DNA from: Hyphochytrium catenoides
Taxonomy: Eukaryota > Protista > Hyphochytriomycota
Direction of reading: 5' to 3'
DNA length: 64,000 nt
Assembly (NCBI GenBank): GCA_900088475.1
Contig: FLMG01003710.1
Location: 62,001-126,000, forward strand
How positions within the stretch are numbered: the stretch's first letter is position 1; every line of letters begins with the position of its first letter. Below the pieces are notes generated by a model that was given only the letters and a program-made list of their open reading frames with translations, searched no databases and had not been told where the DNA came from. Shown here in pieces: positions 31,829 through 41,480 of the stretch. The position numbers were made by a program, and so were the translations under genes.

Positions 31829-31936
31829 CGAGTGCTACAATTAAATATCATAAATAAGCAACGACTAACGCCTCGTGGTGTAAAGCATCTCCTCTGAGGT
31901 CTCTTCTCTAGTGTGCCCTTTCCGCCGCTCATTTAG

Positions 31937-34900
31937 CTAGAGCTCTACCAGGTGATCGACCTCTCTGGGCAGAGAAGACTCTACGTAGGAAAAGTTCTCG
32001 AAGTGTCCATCCGAAGGGCGGATGCCTAACATTGACTGCTTGCCTGTAGGAGAGTCAACTGGCTCCATGGATTGGAAGAGCTGTGGCGTGTAGTTCGTGT
32101 CCTCCTCGCTCGTGACCTGAGGGACGAAGGGAGGCTGCACCTCCCTTTTAAGCAGTTTATCCCAGTTGATCGAGTCGTAGAAAGGATGCTGCATAATCTC
32201 TGCTCCTCCCTCGGGACCGCCACCCAGACGCTTGGCAGGATCGCGAATAAGGAGTTTGCTGCAGGAAGAAGTTTGTAAGGGGTCGAAGCAGCGACAGAGA
32301 TCCAACAGGAATAGAGATCACGGTAGGCGCGGGCATACGGTATCCATGCAGTGGTCAAGCCAGAGCTTGTACAGCGCCAGGGGACAGAGAGAAGAGGAAA
32401 GCCACAATGCGTACGTGAAAGATGAGAGGACTGGAGGGTGAGAAGCATACAATGTCAGGGAGAGAGTCGCATTGTGAAGTTTCAAATGGAACCAAAGAGA
32501 GCTTGGAGGAAGGCGCAGGTAGAGGACAGAAGTACACAGACGAGGCATGAGCTACGATACCTGATGAGATCCCTGCAGACAGGAGAGATGTAGGAGGGAT
32601 ACGCGGCTTCTGAGCTGACAATATTCTTGAACATCTGACGTCGGTTTCTGTCCACGAAAGGCGTCCGCCCTGTCAGCATCTCAAAGACAAGGATCCCATA
32701 AGACCACCAGTCCACCACTTTTCCATAGGGTTGATGTCGCAAGAGCTCCGGTGCCTTGCAGGACAAGAAGAGAGCGGGATTTGACGGACGTGAGACGAGC
32801 TGTTGAGAGGGAAGTACCGCTATGAACGATAGATAGCAGACGATCGCCAAGACACAGAGCAAGTGAATGAGAGAGAGGACTTCTATTTCGACTAATGACT
32901 GCCCTCTCTTGTGTCTTACCATGTACTCGGCAGTGCCACATATCGTCCTCATGCCCTCGCTCTCGCCCTGGCCCAAGTTGTTCTCCTTTGACAGACCGAA
33001 GTCGGTGAGTGAGATGTGGCCATCCTTATCCATAAGGATGTTCTCCAGCTTCAGATCTCTGTAGGCAATGTTCTTCCCGTGCAGGTGAATAAGGGCCGTA
33101 AGTAGCTCTGCGCCGTAGAGACGTGTCCTGGCTTCTGAAAAGCGCTTGCTCTTTCTTAAGTGATAGAAGAGAGAACCGCCAGGATAGTAGTCCATGACCA
33201 AGTAGAGCTTGTCAGGGCTCTGAAAGGCATACCGAAGGCGGACAATGAATGGATGATCGATCTCCTTTAGGATGTGCTGCTCTGCCTTGGTGTTCTCCAC
33301 CTAACAAGTGACAGTCAGTTGACATTTAAAGAAATAGGCAAAGGGAAGAGCAACAGATCTGGCGTAAGCGGAAAACAAATGGTGCCACTGTATAGCCGAA
33401 GAGCAGGACCAAAGCACAAAGATAGAGATTGGACACAAGAGCGAAATGAGAGAAAGAAAATGAGAGAGGGTAGGACGGGAGAAAGAGAAAGAAAGAGAGA
33501 GAGAGAGGGAGGGAGAGAGAGAGAGGAAATGTGCGCCCAACCTGATCATTCTTGATGATGTGACTCTTCTTCAAAATCTTCATCGCATACACGCTGCCTG
33601 CATTCTTGCCAGCTTTCTTTCTGACCAACAGCACTTTCCCGAACGCTCCTCTGCCCACCACCTTCATTAGATCAAAGTCGTCAGGAGTCAGAGGCTTTTG
33701 AGGTTGTCTTCTCTTCTCTGGTGGAAGACGCGCTTCGCTCTGCCGAATCATATCTTCAACCTGCGGTAACAGAGGGCATTGCCAGAGGTAACCCGACCAG
33801 GGATATGGGAGATCATTAGCGTGCGGGCAATCAGAGGAGTGCGTCTCCTTGTAGGCTTGTGACGGTCAGAGAAAGAAGGAGACGGACCCACATGCGTTTG
33901 AAGAAGAACGAAAAGAAAGGTCATTGGAGAGAAGGAGGGGTATCCATCATCACAAGGACGGGTGTTCGTTCTCTCAGATTTTAAGCATCGGCCAATGAAT
34001 GGTTGCCCATCGGCCTCCTTTAGCCGAGAGAATGTAATCATATGGATGATATCTTGGTTCAAATAGCATAAGAGAAGACAGAGAGATTGGAGCCGGCTGG
34101 AAGCGAGATTATAGCTTACATGATCGACTACTGCCTTGTCGTTGCCCTGCATAGTGACCTGCATCTCGTAGCACGCCTTACAAATCCTCTGTGGCTCTTC
34201 GAAGCCAGGAAGGAATAGACGGTCGGAGCAGCTCGTGCAAACATTACGTAGACATAACCGACATTGATGCTTCCTCTGTCCTCGGAAGGAATCATTGCAG
34301 AGGTAGCACATGCTGTCTTCAGCGGGATTGGGGGACAAGGTCCCATTGAGCATGCCAACTGATCGACAAACAAGGAGAACGAATGCAGCAATGAGTACGA
34401 CAAAGAAGAAGCCGGCGGCAAAGAGAGGAAGATGAAGAAGACTGAGCTCACAGAAAGAGAGAGACAGACAGACAGAGAGAGAGAGAGAGAGAAAGGAGAG
34501 AGAGGCAGGGAGAGAGAGAAAAGGGTATATCGAAAGAGAATGAGGTTCACCATTCTGAGGCTCAATGGGTCCATAATTCTGCCGCACGGCAGCCTGCTCC
34601 TTTTGACTGACGAATGTGTCATGCAGCCACTCAACAGTAAGCTCGACCTCCGTATTGCTTTTCTGCATCCTGCCGCCGTTGTCTTGCTTGAGAGGATACC
34701 ACTTTTTCTCAGGCTTGCTCTGAGTGATCCTTAGCATTTGGATTACGTTCTGACCTAGCACCTTAGAGCCTAGAGAACGAACAAGCGAACAAGTAAGCAG
34801 CGCATGACAGAGGCAGACAGGGAGACGAAGTGAGCAACGAAGCGAGCGGGGAGCCTCCTTGAGCGAGTACTATCGACATAAGATGGCTAACTAGAGCACC

Positions 34901-37520
34901 CGTAGTAGAGAGAAGCAGTAGGAGACCAGCGAGAGAAGGAAGGCAATGCCAATACGACGGTGCAGCGTGATATGGCTGTCTTACCTGTGAAGCCTCTATC
35001 CTTGACCTGAATGACAACCGCCGCTTCTCCATTGGACACTGGGAATGTGAAGGTCTGGTTCCAGTCGGGATTCATGCTCTTCTGCTGCCAGGGCGCCGTT
35101 TCTCTCTTTTGTCCCCCACAGAAGATGGCTACAAACGGACTGTTGACAGCTGGCACGTTGAGCTTCGTGCGCCCGATAGTCACTATAAGCTTATTGGGAC
35201 ATGTGGCTTGCAATGCCCTTTGTGCCTCCTACAGGAACCACGAAGAGAGATAAAAGAGACAGAGTACCGATGAGAAAAAGAGAGGGCCATAAAATTCCCC
35301 AGGTGATCAGCCGCAGTGCTCTGAGTCGCTGGACCGGACAACTCTCGCCTATCGTCCCGCCAAATGAAGGATTGGAAGATTGATCGCCCCCTAATCTGGG
35401 TCTTAAGATTGCGAGTGTAGGTGGCTCACGAAAAAGGAAGATATCGAGGTGCAAAAGTCAAGATCTGAGCTGTGCCAACAGCGTTTTAATGTGTTACGCC
35501 ACAGCCCTGCCGTGCTCCTGAGCCTAATCCCTTGCTGCTTACCTTCATGCCTTGCCTACAAGCCTCTAAAAAGACAAATGTGGAGTTTTGCATCGCCGCC
35601 ACAGTCCACGCGAAGTTCTCGCTCTTATCATTAGTATACCCGGACGACAGCGTCAGGCACCCCTTCACCTCTTCCTCGCGGGGCACCGGACAGAACATGC
35701 GAAGGTTCGTGCTTTTGAAGTTCACTGCTGAGTCACTGAGGAAGGAACGTAGCCACTCGGAGTCGGAAGGCTTGACCTGACCAGAGCCACGAGAGACAAA
35801 CAGAAAGAAGGCTCAACAATAGGAGAGAGAAAAGTAACGAAGATATGGCAGGTGAGCAAGGAAGGAAGGTAGACGAAGAGCCTATTCAGACAACTCCGAC
35901 TTCTATGAAAAGAATGGGTAGAGAAGAAGGGCTAACTCAAAAGACCAGCGCAGCCCCGCTCCGAAGATCCGTTATTACCTGATGTGTAGACTCCAGAAAC
36001 ACTACCGCGGAGATCCGCTTTCTCAATGAGACGTCAAAATTCTGAAACACCGGTTTGAACGAGCAGAGAGCCCGGGACATGTGCGGACAAAAGAGAAAGC
36101 GAAAGAATAAGGAAAGAGGCAACGCAGAGACCTGTTAGACCTACAGAATATCTTCATCGGTGGAGAGCAAGCAGCTCTTGATAGAGCATGAAGGTCTAAA
36201 GCCACTGCCTCTCACCTCTAAAAGGTCCTTCACCAGGACGCCTCCATTATAGAAGGCAATAAAACTGATCTTATCCGCCTTCGCCGGGCGGATGTATTGA
36301 CTAAAAACGTAGGACGCATGCTCCCACGGCGTCGATGATGAAGGAATGGGGACTGGGACTCCATTGTCATTGACCAGGTTGGTACCTACAGCCGTGAACC
36401 CAATTTAGAAAATTAATATTTAAAGAATGCTAGCAGCATGGATACTCAGACAAAAGCGCATCAAAGGCAGGCGTGAACAATAAGTAGCGCCAGGCGGCAG
36501 AAGAGTGGATTTCAATGCGTATACCCACCTGGGTTCAGGATTATGATGCCATAATTATTCTGCAAAGCAAGCTCTAAATATGGCAGCATTGACCCGGCCT
36601 GACCGTACCGCAAAGCCAAAGGCCGGCCCCATAGTCCGGGCTGAATACCTGAAAAGGAATACGTGAAGTTAGCAATCTTCAGGAGGAGCATGACATGGGC
36701 TTTGAAGTGAGGAGTCTGGACCCGATGGATCGCTCACACTGGGTCCGATACGCCCGACTCTGGCTCAACAGCTCGGGCGACAACTTACCTCTGCTTGTCT
36801 GAACAAAGACAAGCAGTTTAGAGCAGACCGAGTAGTCTGGACTAGCGAAAATACTGCACTTGGCTTTGGCATCAGCATTAGGTATCCAGATCTCTCTCAT
36901 TCCCAGTTCCTGTTTCATTTTCTTTTGTACGCGAAGAGTGAGCTCCGAGAGGGCCTGCAGCTGCTCAGGAGTGAGAGAGCTTGCTCCTCGCTCTTGAGAC
37001 TGCGGCCGCGCTCGTGCCCGGTCCGGGCGGAAGTCTTGTCTCCCTGCGAGTGCGTCCGGACAAAGGAGACAAGTCAAGGGACGGAGAACGATGCAGAAAC
37101 TAGAAGCCTTGCGAACATAGAAGCCCAGACGGGAGAAACACGTTCCACCATCACACAGAACCGCTCAACGCTTATTTGACTTCGGCAAGCGCTATCTCAA
37201 GGAGATGTGCATGAGAATTTGGATAGAGAAGGGAAGTCTATGGACAACCCAGGACAGACATTGAGAGTAGCACGAAGACCAAGACGAGCGACGCTGAGAC
37301 GAGCCAAAGAGAGGTGATTTAGTGACAGGCTAACGGATACGTCACAGGGATAACAAGAAGCCGCAGACAACAAAGGCTTCATAAGGGCACCAGATTAGCG
37401 CCGTCAGCCCGTCACCGTAGAAGGTAAATCTCCTTCCATGAGCTGCTCAGAGGCATGGAACTTACCCATTGTATTCGGCGCGCGACGAGGGTCCCCACGC
37501 ACGCCATTGGGACGGTTCAT
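31937..37520 (-). CDS. Multi-domain AGC kinase: Arb2/FAM172A-like domain - C2 - FYVE-type finger - Akt/SGK-like kinase - AGC C-terminal tail
   Basis: Kinase: GRGAFGKV, YAMKILKK, YRDLKLEN, DFG, TICGTAEYMAPE, DWWSYG, PPFVP and hydrophobic motif FENFSY. FYVE-type: CYLC..F..RKHQCRLC...VC..CS...RICKAC. C2: NPDWNQTFTF...IQVKD. Arb2-like exons at 37043-35543. The kinase is certain; the fusion rests on a phase-0 intron at 35229-35542. Confidence 0.85.
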
Positions 37521-38005
37521 AGTTAGGCCCTTGTCCAACTCTCTCTTTTAGTTCCAGCCCAAAATTATCCTGTCGACATGGGTCCTAATCCTGCAGCTTC
37601 TATCCTGCCAGACGTAGAAGGTGGTATAACTCTCACTTCCTCTTTGTTCCGGCTCACCGGTCACGGAGCGTACGTAGTCTTGGGAAGATCTCCCCTTGGG
37701 CTCAAGCGCAAGAGTAGAGATGCCCGCAGCCAACGGCAACGGGAGCACGGAGCAAAGTTCGTCGCTAAGCAACCTTCAGGTTCACGATACAGCTCCGACC
37801 TCCTCCAAAGAGAGTCTCCTTTAGTTAAAACAGGCGATATAAGGTGCCGAAGTCCAGGCCCAAACGCTTTCTCTTTTTGCAGTAGAAGAAGAGAAAAGAG
37901 CGTCTACCCGACACAGAGAGATTGAGGAGGAAAAGACAGATAGATGGAAAGGTGACCGAAGTCCGACGCTATAAGAAGCGCCGTGCGAGGCTAGCGAGTA
38001 GAGTC

Positions 38006-38006
<1 letters not shown>

Positions 38007-38063
<57 letters not shown>

Positions 38064-39910: not shown

Positions 39911-41480
39911 CTAGACTTTTGACGAGAGTGATGCAGCGGTTGAGTTGGGGGGCACACGGCGCCGTAGCTGTTGAACGAAATCAGCAATCATCAAGGGCCA
40001 CTCCGCCTTGACTTCCTGATAAGTTGAGGCGACGTGGAGTCTGGAACCACCTATTGCATCATGAAGCTTTTTAGCCGTCGACAAGGGATGGACGGGATCC
40101 TCACCCCATGCGAGGATAAGCGTTGGCGCTAAGATAGCTCTAATCTCATCCAGGCTAGGTAAGTCGCATAACGCTGCGCCCTTTAGAATATTGGAGAGGA
40201 CAGTTTTCTGGGTCGTCCCTTCGTTGGCAGTCCCTCCTTCCCTCAGGCACCTGAACTCTGCCAAATGCTTGGCGCTGATCTTATTGTATTGCACTCCGGC
40301 CGCACGGAAGATCTCGAGAGAAGGTTTCTGAATAAAAAGAGATTAGTTCACAGGCCATTCCTTCATATCGGCAGTCTCGACAACCATTACCTCTGCCTTC
40401 ACTTCGCTGTTTCCTTCCTTAACGACAGATTGCCCCAGTGCTCCCATTTACCTTTTCTTTGTTGACCCATATGCACTCACTAATACTTAACGTCTCTCTT
40501 TCTTACTACGCCGGCCACCACCGTCGTTCCAGCGAGCATATTTACTCGCAACTTACATCGGCAAAAGTTGACAAGTATTCGTCCAATCCTTTCTCTTCAA
40601 TCAGTTCCGCTCCTCGAACCATCTTTCCCCTCTGTGTGGCGTCTCTGGTCTCCCAGGCAGTCGGAGGAATAACAAGGATGAGGCCAAGAACTCTCTCAGG
40701 GGCCTGCAGAGCAGCGTAAATTGAAGTCGCACAGCCCATTGACATACCTTAACATAATGGAAACGTGTCAGCTATGCGTTAACAAAATCAAAGCAGGGAT
40801 AGGGACAAGAGAATCCAAAGCTTGAGAATACAGAGAACTAGTATTCCTAGAACTAGCAGACCATGGACTGAGGCGTCCTATTGGATAGATGCAATGACGC
40901 AATCAGTGAGACGACATGAGCAAAAGCGTACAAGGTGGACGATAGAATAGCATCGCAAGCTGAGAGCCAAGCATCACAGAGTCGCCAGGAACATAAGCAA
41001 GGAAATAGATCGAGGCAGAATCGCTCAATTACCTCCGCAGACGAACTGCTCGATTCCGATCTCTGTCGTTAGAGCAAGACAATCTCTTGCTAGATTCTCC
41101 CATTTATAATCCTCGGGCCTAAAGGTGCCCTGTGAGCCACCGTGGCCACGTGCATCATAGCGTATACACTCTACGCCTTCCACTTGTTGCCATAATCTGG
41201 CAGAAAAGACTTCTGCCTCGTCAAGAATATCCATACAATTAAAGAGACCGTGCAGGAAGACAAGCGGTACTCGCTCTTTTGAACTTGAAGTCGCCTCCTT
41301 GGCCTGATCATCTTTATCTTCGTATAACACCCTAGGAATACCAAGGAAGGACAAGGAGAGGTTTTAGCTAGAACATGTGTCCTTGGCCTGCGATGAGACC
41401 AACAGAGTACATGCTGACCTTTCAACCTGCAACTCCACTCCATTAACGGCCACCAATCTCCTAGCTGCTGCTCCTTCCAT
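39911..41480 (-). CDS. Alpha/beta-hydrolase fold enzyme, multi-exon
   Basis: MEGAAARRLVAVNGVELQVE|..LVFLHGL..IRYDARGHGGS..CG|GMSMGCAT (GXSXG)..APERVLGLILVIPPTAWETR..PTLILAWGEDPVHP. Confidence 0.92.

What the first reader, a model, noticed from the sequence alone, without database searches (positions are those of the whole stretch)
31937..37520. Arb2/FAM172A-like domain fused to C2, FYVE and an Akt/SGK-type AGC kinase in one reading frame
Seen: minus-strand exons 37520-37466, 37043-36789, 36648-36529, 36385-36216, 36041-35979 and 35776-35543 splice with canonical GT-AG and matching phases. They give ...CSIFASPDYSVCSKLLVFVQTSRGIQPGLWGRPL...GSMLPYLELALQNNYGIIILNP...STPWEHASYVFSQYI...ISFIAFYNGG...RKRISAVVFLESTHQ...NFKST...CLTLSSG. 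A strong donor AAG|GTAAGC (35542) and acceptor CCTGTAG (35229) are both phase 0 and join this to the C2-FYVE-kinase exons, and I found no good independent start exon for the kinase. Knowledge: these blocks are collinear with human FAM172A/ARB2A (KLMVLIHGSG..GQWAR..GYGVIVLNP..SPEEHAIYVW..FVAHSYGG..AVALTDSVH), a family linked to Argonaute (S. pombe Arb2 in the ARC complex; FAM172A-AGO2). Inference: a lipid-recruited, PDK1/TOR-type kinase is hard-wired to an Argonaute/chromatin-associated module, which could couple membrane signalling to RNA silencing. I do not know a characterised protein with this architecture.
Basis: partly seen in the sequence, partly recalled or inferred. Interest (0 to 1): 0.75.

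Follow-up and report, generated by a model that had tools for sequence, protein, structure and literature searches.

The report
Arb2–C2–FYVE–AGC kinase gene, known type
The thirteen minus-strand exons form one gene for a protein kinase with Arb2, C2 and FYVE domains in front.

Summary
They have GT-AG borders and matching phases and give a 2715-nt, 904-codon reading frame. Exon-by-exon Pfam scans find Arb2, C2, FYVE, Pkinase and, marginally, Pkinase_C.

No RNA run was listed, so the Arb2|C2 splice (35543|35228) has no transcript evidence. Comparative evidence for it is strong:
- In 11 of 12 full-length orthologues, the last residue of the Arb2 exon and the first residue of the C2 exon fall on adjacent residues.
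- One relative carries all the domains in a single uninterrupted 905-aa ORF.
- In this genome, 7 of 8 Arb2 loci are followed by AGC kinase exons on the same strand, one as a single 678-aa ORF.

The architecture is not new. Judelson and Ah-Fong (2010) list P. infestans PITG_06776 as an AGC/AKT kinase with ARB2, C2 and FYVE. Annotated orthologues exist in Pythium, Bremia, Albugo and Saprolegnia.

Nothing here supports the proposed link to Argonaute or RNA silencing. The Arb2 domain folds like the Hda1/Clr3 module and lacks a hydrolase nucleophile. The FYVE lipid-binding motif is non-canonical.

Verdict: a real fusion, a new member of a known kind, of low to moderate interest.

The parts
37466..37520 (-). 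Putative exon 1 (ATG start, 55 nt). It is the least certain part of the model.
   Evidence: ATG at 37520, donor GTAAGT, phase fits exon 2. No orthologue alignment covers it.
36789..37043 (-). Exon 2: N-terminal helix and the start of the Arb2 domain.
   Evidence: Pfam Arb2 profile 47-95, 13.3 bits. 37-54% identity to orthologues.
36529..36648 (-). Exon 3: Arb2 domain.
   Evidence: Pfam Arb2 profile 115-138. The junctions to exons 2 and 4 each project to a gap of exactly one split-codon residue in every orthologue compared (10 for exon 2|3, 12 for exon 3|4).
36216..36385 (-). Exon 4: Arb2 domain core with the 'elbow' FIAFYNGG (Tyr where hydrolases carry the nucleophile).
   Evidence: Pfam Arb2 29.4 bits, above the 26.8 cut-off. 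Elbow census.
35979..36041 (-). Exon 5: Arb2 domain, with the conserved FLESTHQ motif.
   Evidence: Translation. It matches the orthologue motif IAFIESAH by eye. It is too short for a BLAST hit.
35543..35776 (-). Exon 6: C-terminal part of the Arb2 domain, ending ...FVFLEACRQGMK.
   Evidence: 31-41% identity to orthologues. Its last residue projects onto the residue just before the C2 exon's first residue in 11 of 12 orthologues.
35229..35542 (-). Intron 6 (314 nt), the junction in question. It holds a TAA about 18 codons in, and an ATTAAA at 35490.
   Evidence: Donor GTAAGC, acceptor CCTGTAG, both phase 0. No alternative start exon.
34985..35228 (-). Exon 7: linker and the first part of the C2 domain.
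   Evidence: Pfam C2 36.9 bits. 44-52% identity to orthologues.
34551..34769 (-). Exon 8: the rest of the C2 domain and the start of a variable linker.
   Evidence: 34-41% identity to orthologues. No Pfham hit on its own.
34120..34358 (-). Exon 9: FYVE zinc finger with eight Cys and the basic motif RKHQCR.
   Evidence: Pfam FYVE 42.8 bits. Alignments.
33542..33760 (-). Exon 10: linker and kinase N lobe (GRGAFGKV, YAMK).
   Evidence: Pfam Pkinase profile 2-41. 54-79% identity to orthologues.
32920..33300 (-). Exon 11: kinase core (YRDLKLEN, DFG, activation loop TICGTAEYM).
   Evidence: Pfam Pkinase 124.8 bits. 73-78% identity to orthologues.
32561..32754 (-). Exon 12: kinase C lobe (APELL...).
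   Evidence: Pfam Pkinase 49.9 bits. 75-89% identity to orthologues. Its junction with exon 11 shows gap 0 in 12 of 12 orthologues.
31937..32258 (-). Exon 13: end of the kinase domain and the AGC C-terminal tail with hydrophobic motif FENFSY. TAG stop at 31937-31939.
   Evidence: Pfam Pkinase_C 20.8 bits against a cut-off of 20.9. 46-57% identity to orthologues.

Best explanation
Window 31937-37520 (minus strand) is one 13-exon gene. Its roughly 904-residue protein has the domain order Arb2, C2, FYVE, AGC kinase, AGC tail. It is the orthologue of the oomycete 'AGC/AKT' kinases typified by Phytophthora infestans PITG_06776.

What is shown: the gene structure, the domain content, an intact catalytic and regulatory motif set (Gly loop, VAIK Lys, YRD, DFG, T-loop TxCGT, hydrophobic motif FxxFSY), orthology, and an Arb2 fold of the Hda1/Clr3 type in an orthologue.

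What is inferred about how it works: it acts like an Akt/SGK3/Ypk1-type kinase that is switched on by T-loop and hydrophobic-motif phosphorylation. C2 plus a variant FYVE finger take the place of the PH or PX membrane-targeting module. The Arb2 domain lacks a nucleophile (Tyr here, Asp in most orthologues), so it most likely serves as a non-catalytic scaffold for self-association or partner docking rather than as an enzyme. Self-association would give two C2-FYVE units per complex, and so more avid membrane binding or trans-activation. This last step is inference from published Hda1, Clr3 and FAM172A dimerisation and was not shown here.
For: Exon phases and GT-AG borders.

Exon-wise Pfam hits for all five domains.

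Every exon's best matches are the 14 database proteins that carry Arb2+C2+FYVE+Pkinase.

The exon 6|exon 7 junction projects onto adjacent orthologue residues in 11 of 12 cases. The phase-1/2 junctions show the expected one-residue gap.

L019 is a single 905-aa ORF with all domains. Pythium oligandrum genomic DNA carries residues 8-884 in one frame.

The kinase tree places the window inside the Arb2-C2-FYVE clade with SH-aLRT 100.

In the window's own genome, 7 of 8 Arb2 loci are followed by AGC kinase exons on the same strand. One of them is a single 678-aa ORF with Arb2 at 85.7 bits, Pkinase at 232.9 and Pkinase_C at 31.8.

The literature lists PITG_06776 with ARB2, C2 and FYVE.

The Arb2 profile hits Clr3 (E 3.4e-6) and Hda1 (E 0.006) by sequence. 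The model of orthologue P0109:1-262 (pLDDT 92) has Clr3 and Hda1 as its top Foldseek hits.

The conserved Arb2 subregion mediates homodimerisation in Hda1, Clr3 and FAM172A.
Against: No RNA run was listed, so there is no transcript evidence from this organism.

Exon 1 and intron 8 are not confirmed by orthologues. Intron 8 is 192 nt, has no in-frame stop and lies in a variable linker.

An ATTAAA sits on the first in-frame stop of intron 6, so a short Arb2-only isoform cannot be excluded.

The FYVE basic motif is RKHQCR rather than R(R/K)HHCR, and there is no WxxD, so PI3P targeting is uncertain.

In P. sojae the related PsZFPK1 was cytoplasmic whether or not its FYVE domain was present.

The Arb2 scaffold or dimer role is inferred, not shown.
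Confidence: 0.9

Rival explanations
1. There are two adjacent genes. A stand-alone Arb2 protein ends at the TAA at about 35486 in 'intron 6', and a separate C2-FYVE-kinase gene starts downstream.
For: Read-through of the donor reaches a stop after 18 codons, and an ATTAAA overlaps it. No RNA data exist to exclude this.
Against: The C2 exon has no Met before the domain. The 314-nt gap has no usable start exon. Orthologues run straight across the junction without an indel, some as single ORFs. Seven of eight Arb2 loci in this genome sit directly upstream of AGC kinase exons, and one is a single ORF.
Confidence: 0.03
2. The Arb2 module ties the kinase physically to Argonaute or chromatin, so that lipid signalling feeds into RNA silencing.
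For: The family name comes from S. pombe Arb2. FAM172A binds AGO2 directly. The genome has one Piwi-domain gene at 371 bits. Judelson and Ah-Fong raised the same idea in 2010.
Against: No evidence from this locus. The closest solved relatives of the domain are the HDACs Clr3 and Hda1, not Argonaute partners. FAM172A's AGO2 binding depends on E229 in its NLS loop, not on the conserved core. The same Arb2 module is attached to three different kinase architectures, with a family-specific change at the elbow residue. That pattern fits a general regulatory scaffold better.
Confidence: 0.06
3. The Arb2 domain is an active or ligand-sensing alpha/beta-hydrolase whose state controls the kinase.
For: The fold is alpha/beta-hydrolase-like, with many esterases among the Foldseek hits. 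The Arb2-FYVE-kinase subfamily keeps G-Y-S-Y-G-G in 19 of 20 members. The Arb2-C2-FYVE subfamily mostly has Asp at that site, and some hydrolases use Asp as a nucleophile (the last point is general knowledge).
Against: The window protein has Tyr at this position. The Arb2-kinase subfamily has Gly in 46 of 48 members. No acid or His of a catalytic triad was established here. Hda1 and Clr3 Arb2 domains are not known enzymes.
Confidence: 0.05

Closest known systems
Phytophthora infestans PITG_06776 and its oomycete orthologues (annotated AGC/AKT or 'RAC family' kinases of Pythium, Bremia, Albugo, Saprolegnia, Thraustotheca)
   Same: Same domain order: Arb2, C2, FYVE, Pkinase, AGC tail. Similar length (859-942 aa against about 904). 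Collinear across every exon junction. 73-89% identity in the kinase core. The kinase falls in the same clade.
   Different: Only 31-59% identity in the Arb2, C2 and FYVE exons. The window gene has 12 introns, whereas relatives are intron-poor. The elbow residue is Tyr instead of Asp. The FYVE motif is RKHQCR instead of RRR[YH]CR.
PITG_01365 / P. sojae PsZFPK4 (PHYSODRAFT_360424) type: Arb2-FYVE-AGC kinases
   Same: Arb2 at the N terminus, then a FYVE finger and an AGC kinase. A paralogue of this type is present in the same genome on contig C521.
   Different: No C2 domain. Canonical RRHHCR FYVE motif. Ser kept at the elbow. A separate clade in the kinase tree.
PsZFPK1 of Phytophthora sojae, the only knocked-out FYVE-AGC kinase of oomycetes
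   Same: A FYVE plus AGC kinase with a long N-terminal region (residues 2-321) that is required for function. Loss affects growth, sporangia, oospores and virulence.
   Different: It is a different family member (FYVE motif RRIPCS, T-loop at residue 602). The paper does not mention Arb2 or C2, and I did not retrieve its sequence, so whether its N-terminal region is an Arb2 domain is unknown.
Animal SGK3 and Akt, yeast Ypk1
   Same: The same AGC kinase subfamily by best hits (AKT3 and YPK1). T-loop and hydrophobic-motif sites are present. A phosphoinositide-type targeting module lies N-terminal to the kinase.
   Different: They use a PX or PH domain instead of C2 plus FYVE, and they have no Arb2 domain.
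Arb2-domain proteins: S. pombe Clr3, S. cerevisiae Hda1, animal FAM172A
   Same: The same Pfam family and fold.
   Different: In those proteins the domain is attached to a histone deacetylase or stands alone. FAM172A has an NLS/CK2 loop that is implicated in AGO2 binding. No such basic loop is evident in the short stretch between the ILNP and SSTP motifs of the window protein; this was read by eye and not aligned to FAM172A.

Membership tests
Arb2 domain (Pfam PF22749) | Match to the family HMM above the gathering score | tested here: met
   Exon 4 alone scores 29.4 bits against 26.8. Exons 2 and 3 give collinear sub-threshold hits at profile 47-95 and 115-138. Orthologues score 82-91 bits.
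Arb2 domain (Pfam PF22749) | Alpha/beta-hydrolase-like fold of the Hda1/Clr3 C-terminal domain | tested here: met
   Tested on orthologue P0109:1-262, not on the spliced window protein. pLDDT 92.1. Top Foldseek hits are 5ikk (Clr3) and 5j8j (Hda1). The profile hits 5ikk at E 3.4e-6.
Arb2 domain (Pfam PF22749) | Binding to Argonaute (the property that named the family) | not tested
   No test was run. The genome does have a Piwi-domain gene.
AGC kinase, Akt/SGK/Ypk-like | Complete catalytic domain with Gly loop, VAIK Lys, (H/Y)RD, DFG and APE | tested here: met
   Pkinase hits of 19.4, 124.8 and 49.9 bits over profile positions 2-228. The motifs GRGAFGKV, YAMK, YRDLKLEN, DFG and APE can be read.
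AGC kinase, Akt/SGK/Ypk-like | AGC C-terminal tail with hydrophobic motif FxxF(S/T)Y and T-loop TxCGTxxY | tested here: met
   FENFSY and TICGTAEY are present. Pkinase_C scores 20.8 bits, just under the 20.9 cut-off.
FYVE zinc finger (PF01363) | HMM match and eight zinc-binding Cys | tested here: met
   42.8 bits against 27.8. There are four CxxC pairs in exon 9.
FYVE zinc finger (PF01363) | PI3P-binding signature: WxxD, R(R/K)HHCR and RVC | tested here: not met
   The window has no WxxD. It has RKHQCR in place of R(R/K)HHCR, and RIC in place of RVC. Orthologues have RRR[YH]CR. It is a FYVE fold, but PI3P specificity cannot be assumed.
C2 domain (PF00168) | HMM match above the gathering score | tested here: met
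   Exon 7 scores 36.9 bits against 22. Orthologues cover the full profile, positions 2-104. Calcium-binding aspartates were not assessed.
Oomycete-type Arb2-C2-FYVE-AGC kinases (PITG_06776 group) | Same domain order in one polypeptide, and orthology of the kinase | tested here: met
   All 12 searchable exons except the 21-residue exon 5 match this group best. Junction collinearity holds. The window sits inside the clade with SH-aLRT 100. One polypeptide in this organism is inferred, not seen in RNA.

The most novel reading that the evidence does not exclude
The Arb2 module defines a stramenopile-wide branch of Akt-like kinases. The branch has three architectures and at least seven genes in this genome. 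In it, Arb2 would act as a partner-docking domain that brings an Argonaute or chromatin-associated protein, or a small-molecule signal, to a membrane-regulated kinase. That would make it a direct wire between phosphoinositide signalling and RNA silencing or chromatin.
Probability: 0.07. Interest if true: 0.7.

Novelty: new member of a known kind. Interest (0 to 1): 0.25.

Why it matters
The practical result is a validated 13-exon gene model and a correct label: an orthologue of the oomycete Arb2-C2-FYVE AGC/AKT kinases.

The architecture has been on record since 2010, but nobody has tested this subfamily functionally. This genome shows that Arb2-kinase fusions form a family here, with at least seven loci and three or four architectures, rather than being a one-off. 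The hydrolase 'elbow' residue and the FYVE lipid motif change with the architecture.

That gives concrete handles for asking what an Arb2 domain does next to a kinase: swap or delete Arb2, or mutate the elbow residue. Related FYVE-AGC kinases matter for growth, sporulation and virulence in Phytophthora sojae.

Tried and rejected
RNA evidence: the look-up of sequencing runs (kind rna) on 31900-37600 listed no run.

ESM Atlas with exon 4: only unnamed 51-53-aa clusters scoring under 0.9. Uninformative.

The search of protein representatives with exon 4 (56 aa): 10 hits. Four were low-complexity artefacts. The rest were Arb2 proteins or fragments, including P0008, which turned out to belong to the C2-less paralogous subfamily.

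The search for homologous proteins with the Arb2 part of the own-genome paralogue L002: one hit only, an Achlya hypogyna Arb2-kinase.

An alignment of L002 with the separate window exons (A1) was too badly aligned to use as a query and was dropped.

Contigs of the fragments P0009 and P0005 were too short or had no DNA.

Complex prediction with two copies of an orthologue's Arb2 domain returned 'no answer' (score 0.01). It is neither support for nor evidence against dimerisation.

The search of earlier findings gave three notes on other genes, none relevant.

Alternative start exons for a separate kinase gene were enumerated and rejected. They were the MK codons at 35548-35543, which are the end of exon 6 itself, and a 10-codon ORF at 35290 with a weak GTCTCT donor only 32 nt from the acceptor.

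The joined spliced protein was never sent to any search, fold or complex tool. Exons were searched one by one by reference. In scripts, only phase arithmetic was done on the model. For the tree, one row was taken from the single stop-free frame 33300-32485, with the intron-coded stretch masked by X.

The organism was not identified. PsZFPK1's sequence was not retrieved.

Full report
**What is in the sequence**

They sum to 897 nt and end in phase 0. I traced seven further exons downstream: 35228-34985, 34769-34551, 34358-34120, 33760-33542, 33300-32920, 32754-32561 and 32258-31937. The full 13-exon model is 2715 nt and 904 codons, with a TAG stop at 31937-31939. All 12 introns are GT...AG and 140-422 nt long. 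Intron 6, the one in question, is 314 nt with donor GTAAGC and acceptor CCTGTAG, and it is unremarkable among them.

**Domains, searched exon by exon**

- Arb2 (PF22749) gives collinear hits in exons 2, 3 and 4, at profile positions 47-95, 115-138 and 169-211. Exon 4 alone passes the gathering score, 29.4 against 26.8 bits.
- Exon 7 hits C2 at 36.9 bits and exon 9 hits FYVE at 42.8 bits.
- Exons 10-12 hit Pkinase at 19.4, 124.8 and 49.9 bits.
- Exon 13 hits Pkinase_C at 20.8 bits, a hair under the 20.9 cut-off.
- The kinase motifs are all present: GRGAFGKV, YAMK, YRDLKLEN, DFG, TICGTAEYM/APE and the hydrophobic motif FENFSY.

**Is it one gene or two?**

No RNA run was listed for this stretch, so the question had to be answered by comparison.

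The first C2 exon opens directly after the acceptor's TAG and has no Met before the domain. The 314-nt gap offers no usable ATG-initiated phase-0 exon.

The window's own genome (61 Mb, 4759 contigs) has Arb2 matches at eight loci. At seven of them, AGC kinase exons follow on the same strand in the same order:
- Contig C4479 carries Arb2 (85.7 bits), Pkinase (232.9) and Pkinase_C (31.8) in one uninterrupted 678-aa frame.
- C3189 carries Arb2 and the kinase N lobe in one 550-aa frame.
- C521 carries Arb2, then FYVE (60.9 bits), then the kinase.

So Arb2-kinase fusion is a family trait in this organism and does not depend on one splice prediction.

**Orthologues**

I searched with the kinase region of an Arb2-FYVE-kinase found earlier (P0008). 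The result showed three architectures among oomycete and other stramenopile proteins: Arb2-FYVE-kinase, Arb2-kinase, and Arb2-C2-FYVE-kinase.

The third group includes annotated proteins of Pythium insidiosum, Pythium oligandrum, Bremia lactucae, Albugo laibachii, Saprolegnia diclina and Thraustotheca clavata (domains re-checked).

Every window exon long enough to search matches this third group best. Identity is 31-59% in the Arb2, C2 and FYVE exons and 73-89% in the kinase core.

The decisive test is the junction. In 11 of 12 full-length orthologues, the last residue of exon 6 and the first residue of exon 7 project onto adjacent residues; the twelfth has a gap of one. The split-codon junctions show exactly the one-residue gap expected, and the phase-0 kinase junctions show none.

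One relative (Logan contig L019) encodes all domains in a single 905-aa ORF. In Pythium oligandrum genomic DNA, residues 8-884 lie in one frame.

I built a quick maximum-likelihood tree of the kinase core. The window row came from the stop-free frame 33300-32485, with its intron-coded part masked by X. The tree puts the window inside the Arb2-C2-FYVE clade with SH-aLRT 100.

I put the probability that this is one gene at about 0.95. Exon 1 and the borders of intron 8, which lies in a variable linker, remain unconfirmed.

**What is already known**

Judelson and Ah-Fong's 2010 kinome of Phytophthora infestans (PMC3019232) lists Arb2 among accessory domains never seen before with protein kinases. 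It names PITG_06776 as an AGC kinase with an N-terminal Arb2 domain that is conserved in other oomycetes and absent from apicomplexans, ciliates and diatoms.

Its supplementary table gives PITG_06776 as AGC/AKT, 883 aa, with domains 'ARB2, C2, FYVE', and PITG_01365 as 'FYVE, ARB2'. The printed PITG_06776 sequence reads ...FVFLQSIASGIEESLHAIRATFPNKLIV..., against the window's ...FVFLEACRQGMK|EAQRALQATCPNKLIV.... The two are the same length across the junction.

Ru et al. 2023 (PMC10381902) named five FYVE-AGC kinases of P. sojae and knocked out PsZFPK1. Growth, oospore formation and virulence suffered, and more sporangia formed. The N-terminal region (residues 2-321), the FYVE domain, the kinase domain and T602 were all required. 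The protein was cytoplasmic regardless of its FYVE domain. That paper does not mention Arb2. PsZFPK4 (360424) is an Arb2-FYVE-kinase in my search (P0088).

The architecture is therefore described, but this subfamily has not been functionally characterised.

**How it probably works**

The kinase part has every feature of an active Akt/SGK/Ypk-type enzyme, including the two regulatory phosphorylation sites. Activation by a PDK1-like and a TOR-complex-like kinase is the natural inference.

C2 plus FYVE occupy the place of the PH or PX domain of Akt or SGK3. However, the FYVE basic motif is RKHQCR here and RRR[YH]CR in orthologues, against the canonical RRHHCR found in the Arb2-FYVE-kinase group. 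There is also no WxxD. PI3P binding should therefore not be assumed.

The Arb2 domain of an orthologue models with pLDDT 92 as an alpha/beta-hydrolase-like fold. Its best solved matches are Clr3 and Hda1, and the family profile also finds them by sequence.

The residue at the hydrolase 'nucleophile elbow' tracks the architecture:
- Ser in 19 of 20 Arb2-FYVE-kinases.
- Gly in 46 of 48 Arb2-kinases.
- Asp in 11 of 14 Arb2-C2-FYVE-kinases.
- Tyr in the window protein.

A conserved enzymatic role is therefore unlikely. A scaffold role is more likely. Published work shows that the conserved Arb2 subregion mediates homodimerisation in Hda1, Clr3 and FAM172A, whereas FAM172A's AGO2 binding depends on a residue in its NLS loop.

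My working model is an Arb2-mediated dimer or docking platform on a membrane-regulated AGC kinase. This is inference.

**The Argonaute idea**

The genome has one Piwi-domain gene, so the partner exists. Nothing at this locus or in the comparisons points to it, and I give the idea about 6%.

**Verdict**

The claim of an unknown architecture is not correct, and the proposed biology is speculative. This is a new member of a known, bioinformatically described but functionally open family. Interest is low to moderate.

Noticed in passing
own genome: L010 (C521), L011 (C4479), L012 (C4384), L013 (C578), L014 (C3189), L015 (C666), L016 (C429): Arb2-to-AGC-kinase genes form a family of at least seven loci in this genome. 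Only the window gene has a C2 domain. C429 has an Arb2 match but no kinase within about 4 kb, where its contig ends.
   Followed up: partly
L012 / L004 (G000:C4384:206320-209763): Two Arb2 domains in tandem (71.7 and 52.9 bits) are followed by a Cys-rich finger with no Pfam hit and then by kinase exons. I did not see this tandem-Arb2 variant among the database hits.
   Followed up: partly
window 36216-36385 (exon 4) and the proteins: The residue at the alpha/beta-hydrolase nucleophile elbow tracks the architecture: Ser in Arb2-FYVE-kinases, Gly in Arb2-kinases, Asp in Arb2-C2-FYVE-kinases, and Tyr in the window. The FYVE basic motif likewise splits into RRHHCR against RRR[YH]CR.
   Followed up: yes
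window 35486-35495: An ATTAAA overlaps the first in-frame stop of intron 6. If it serves as a poly(A) signal, a short Arb2-only isoform could coexist with the fusion.
   Followed up: no
window about 38005-38057: A (GA)n microsatellite lies about 500 nt upstream of the putative start codon. CT-rich low-complexity runs fill several introns; intron 8 is 80% C+T.
   Followed up: no
window 39911-41354, minus strand: ORFs with alpha/beta-hydrolase-like motifs (VFLHGL..., ...LILAWGEDPVHP) suggest a separate upstream gene. That would bound the 5' intergenic region of the kinase gene.
   Followed up: no
L009 (G000:C2026:5401-9300): This is the genome's only Piwi-domain match (371 bits), in a long open frame (836 aa within the locus, 910 aa in the genome-search table). 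It is the organism's candidate Argonaute.
   Followed up: no
one search hits P0051, P0074, P0085, P0090, P0106: Arb2-kinase proteins without FYVE also occur in ochrophyte transcriptomes (Ochromonas, Pinguiococcus, MMETSP entries). The Arb2-AGC fusion is therefore wider than the oomycetes to which the 2010 paper assigned it.
   Followed up: partly
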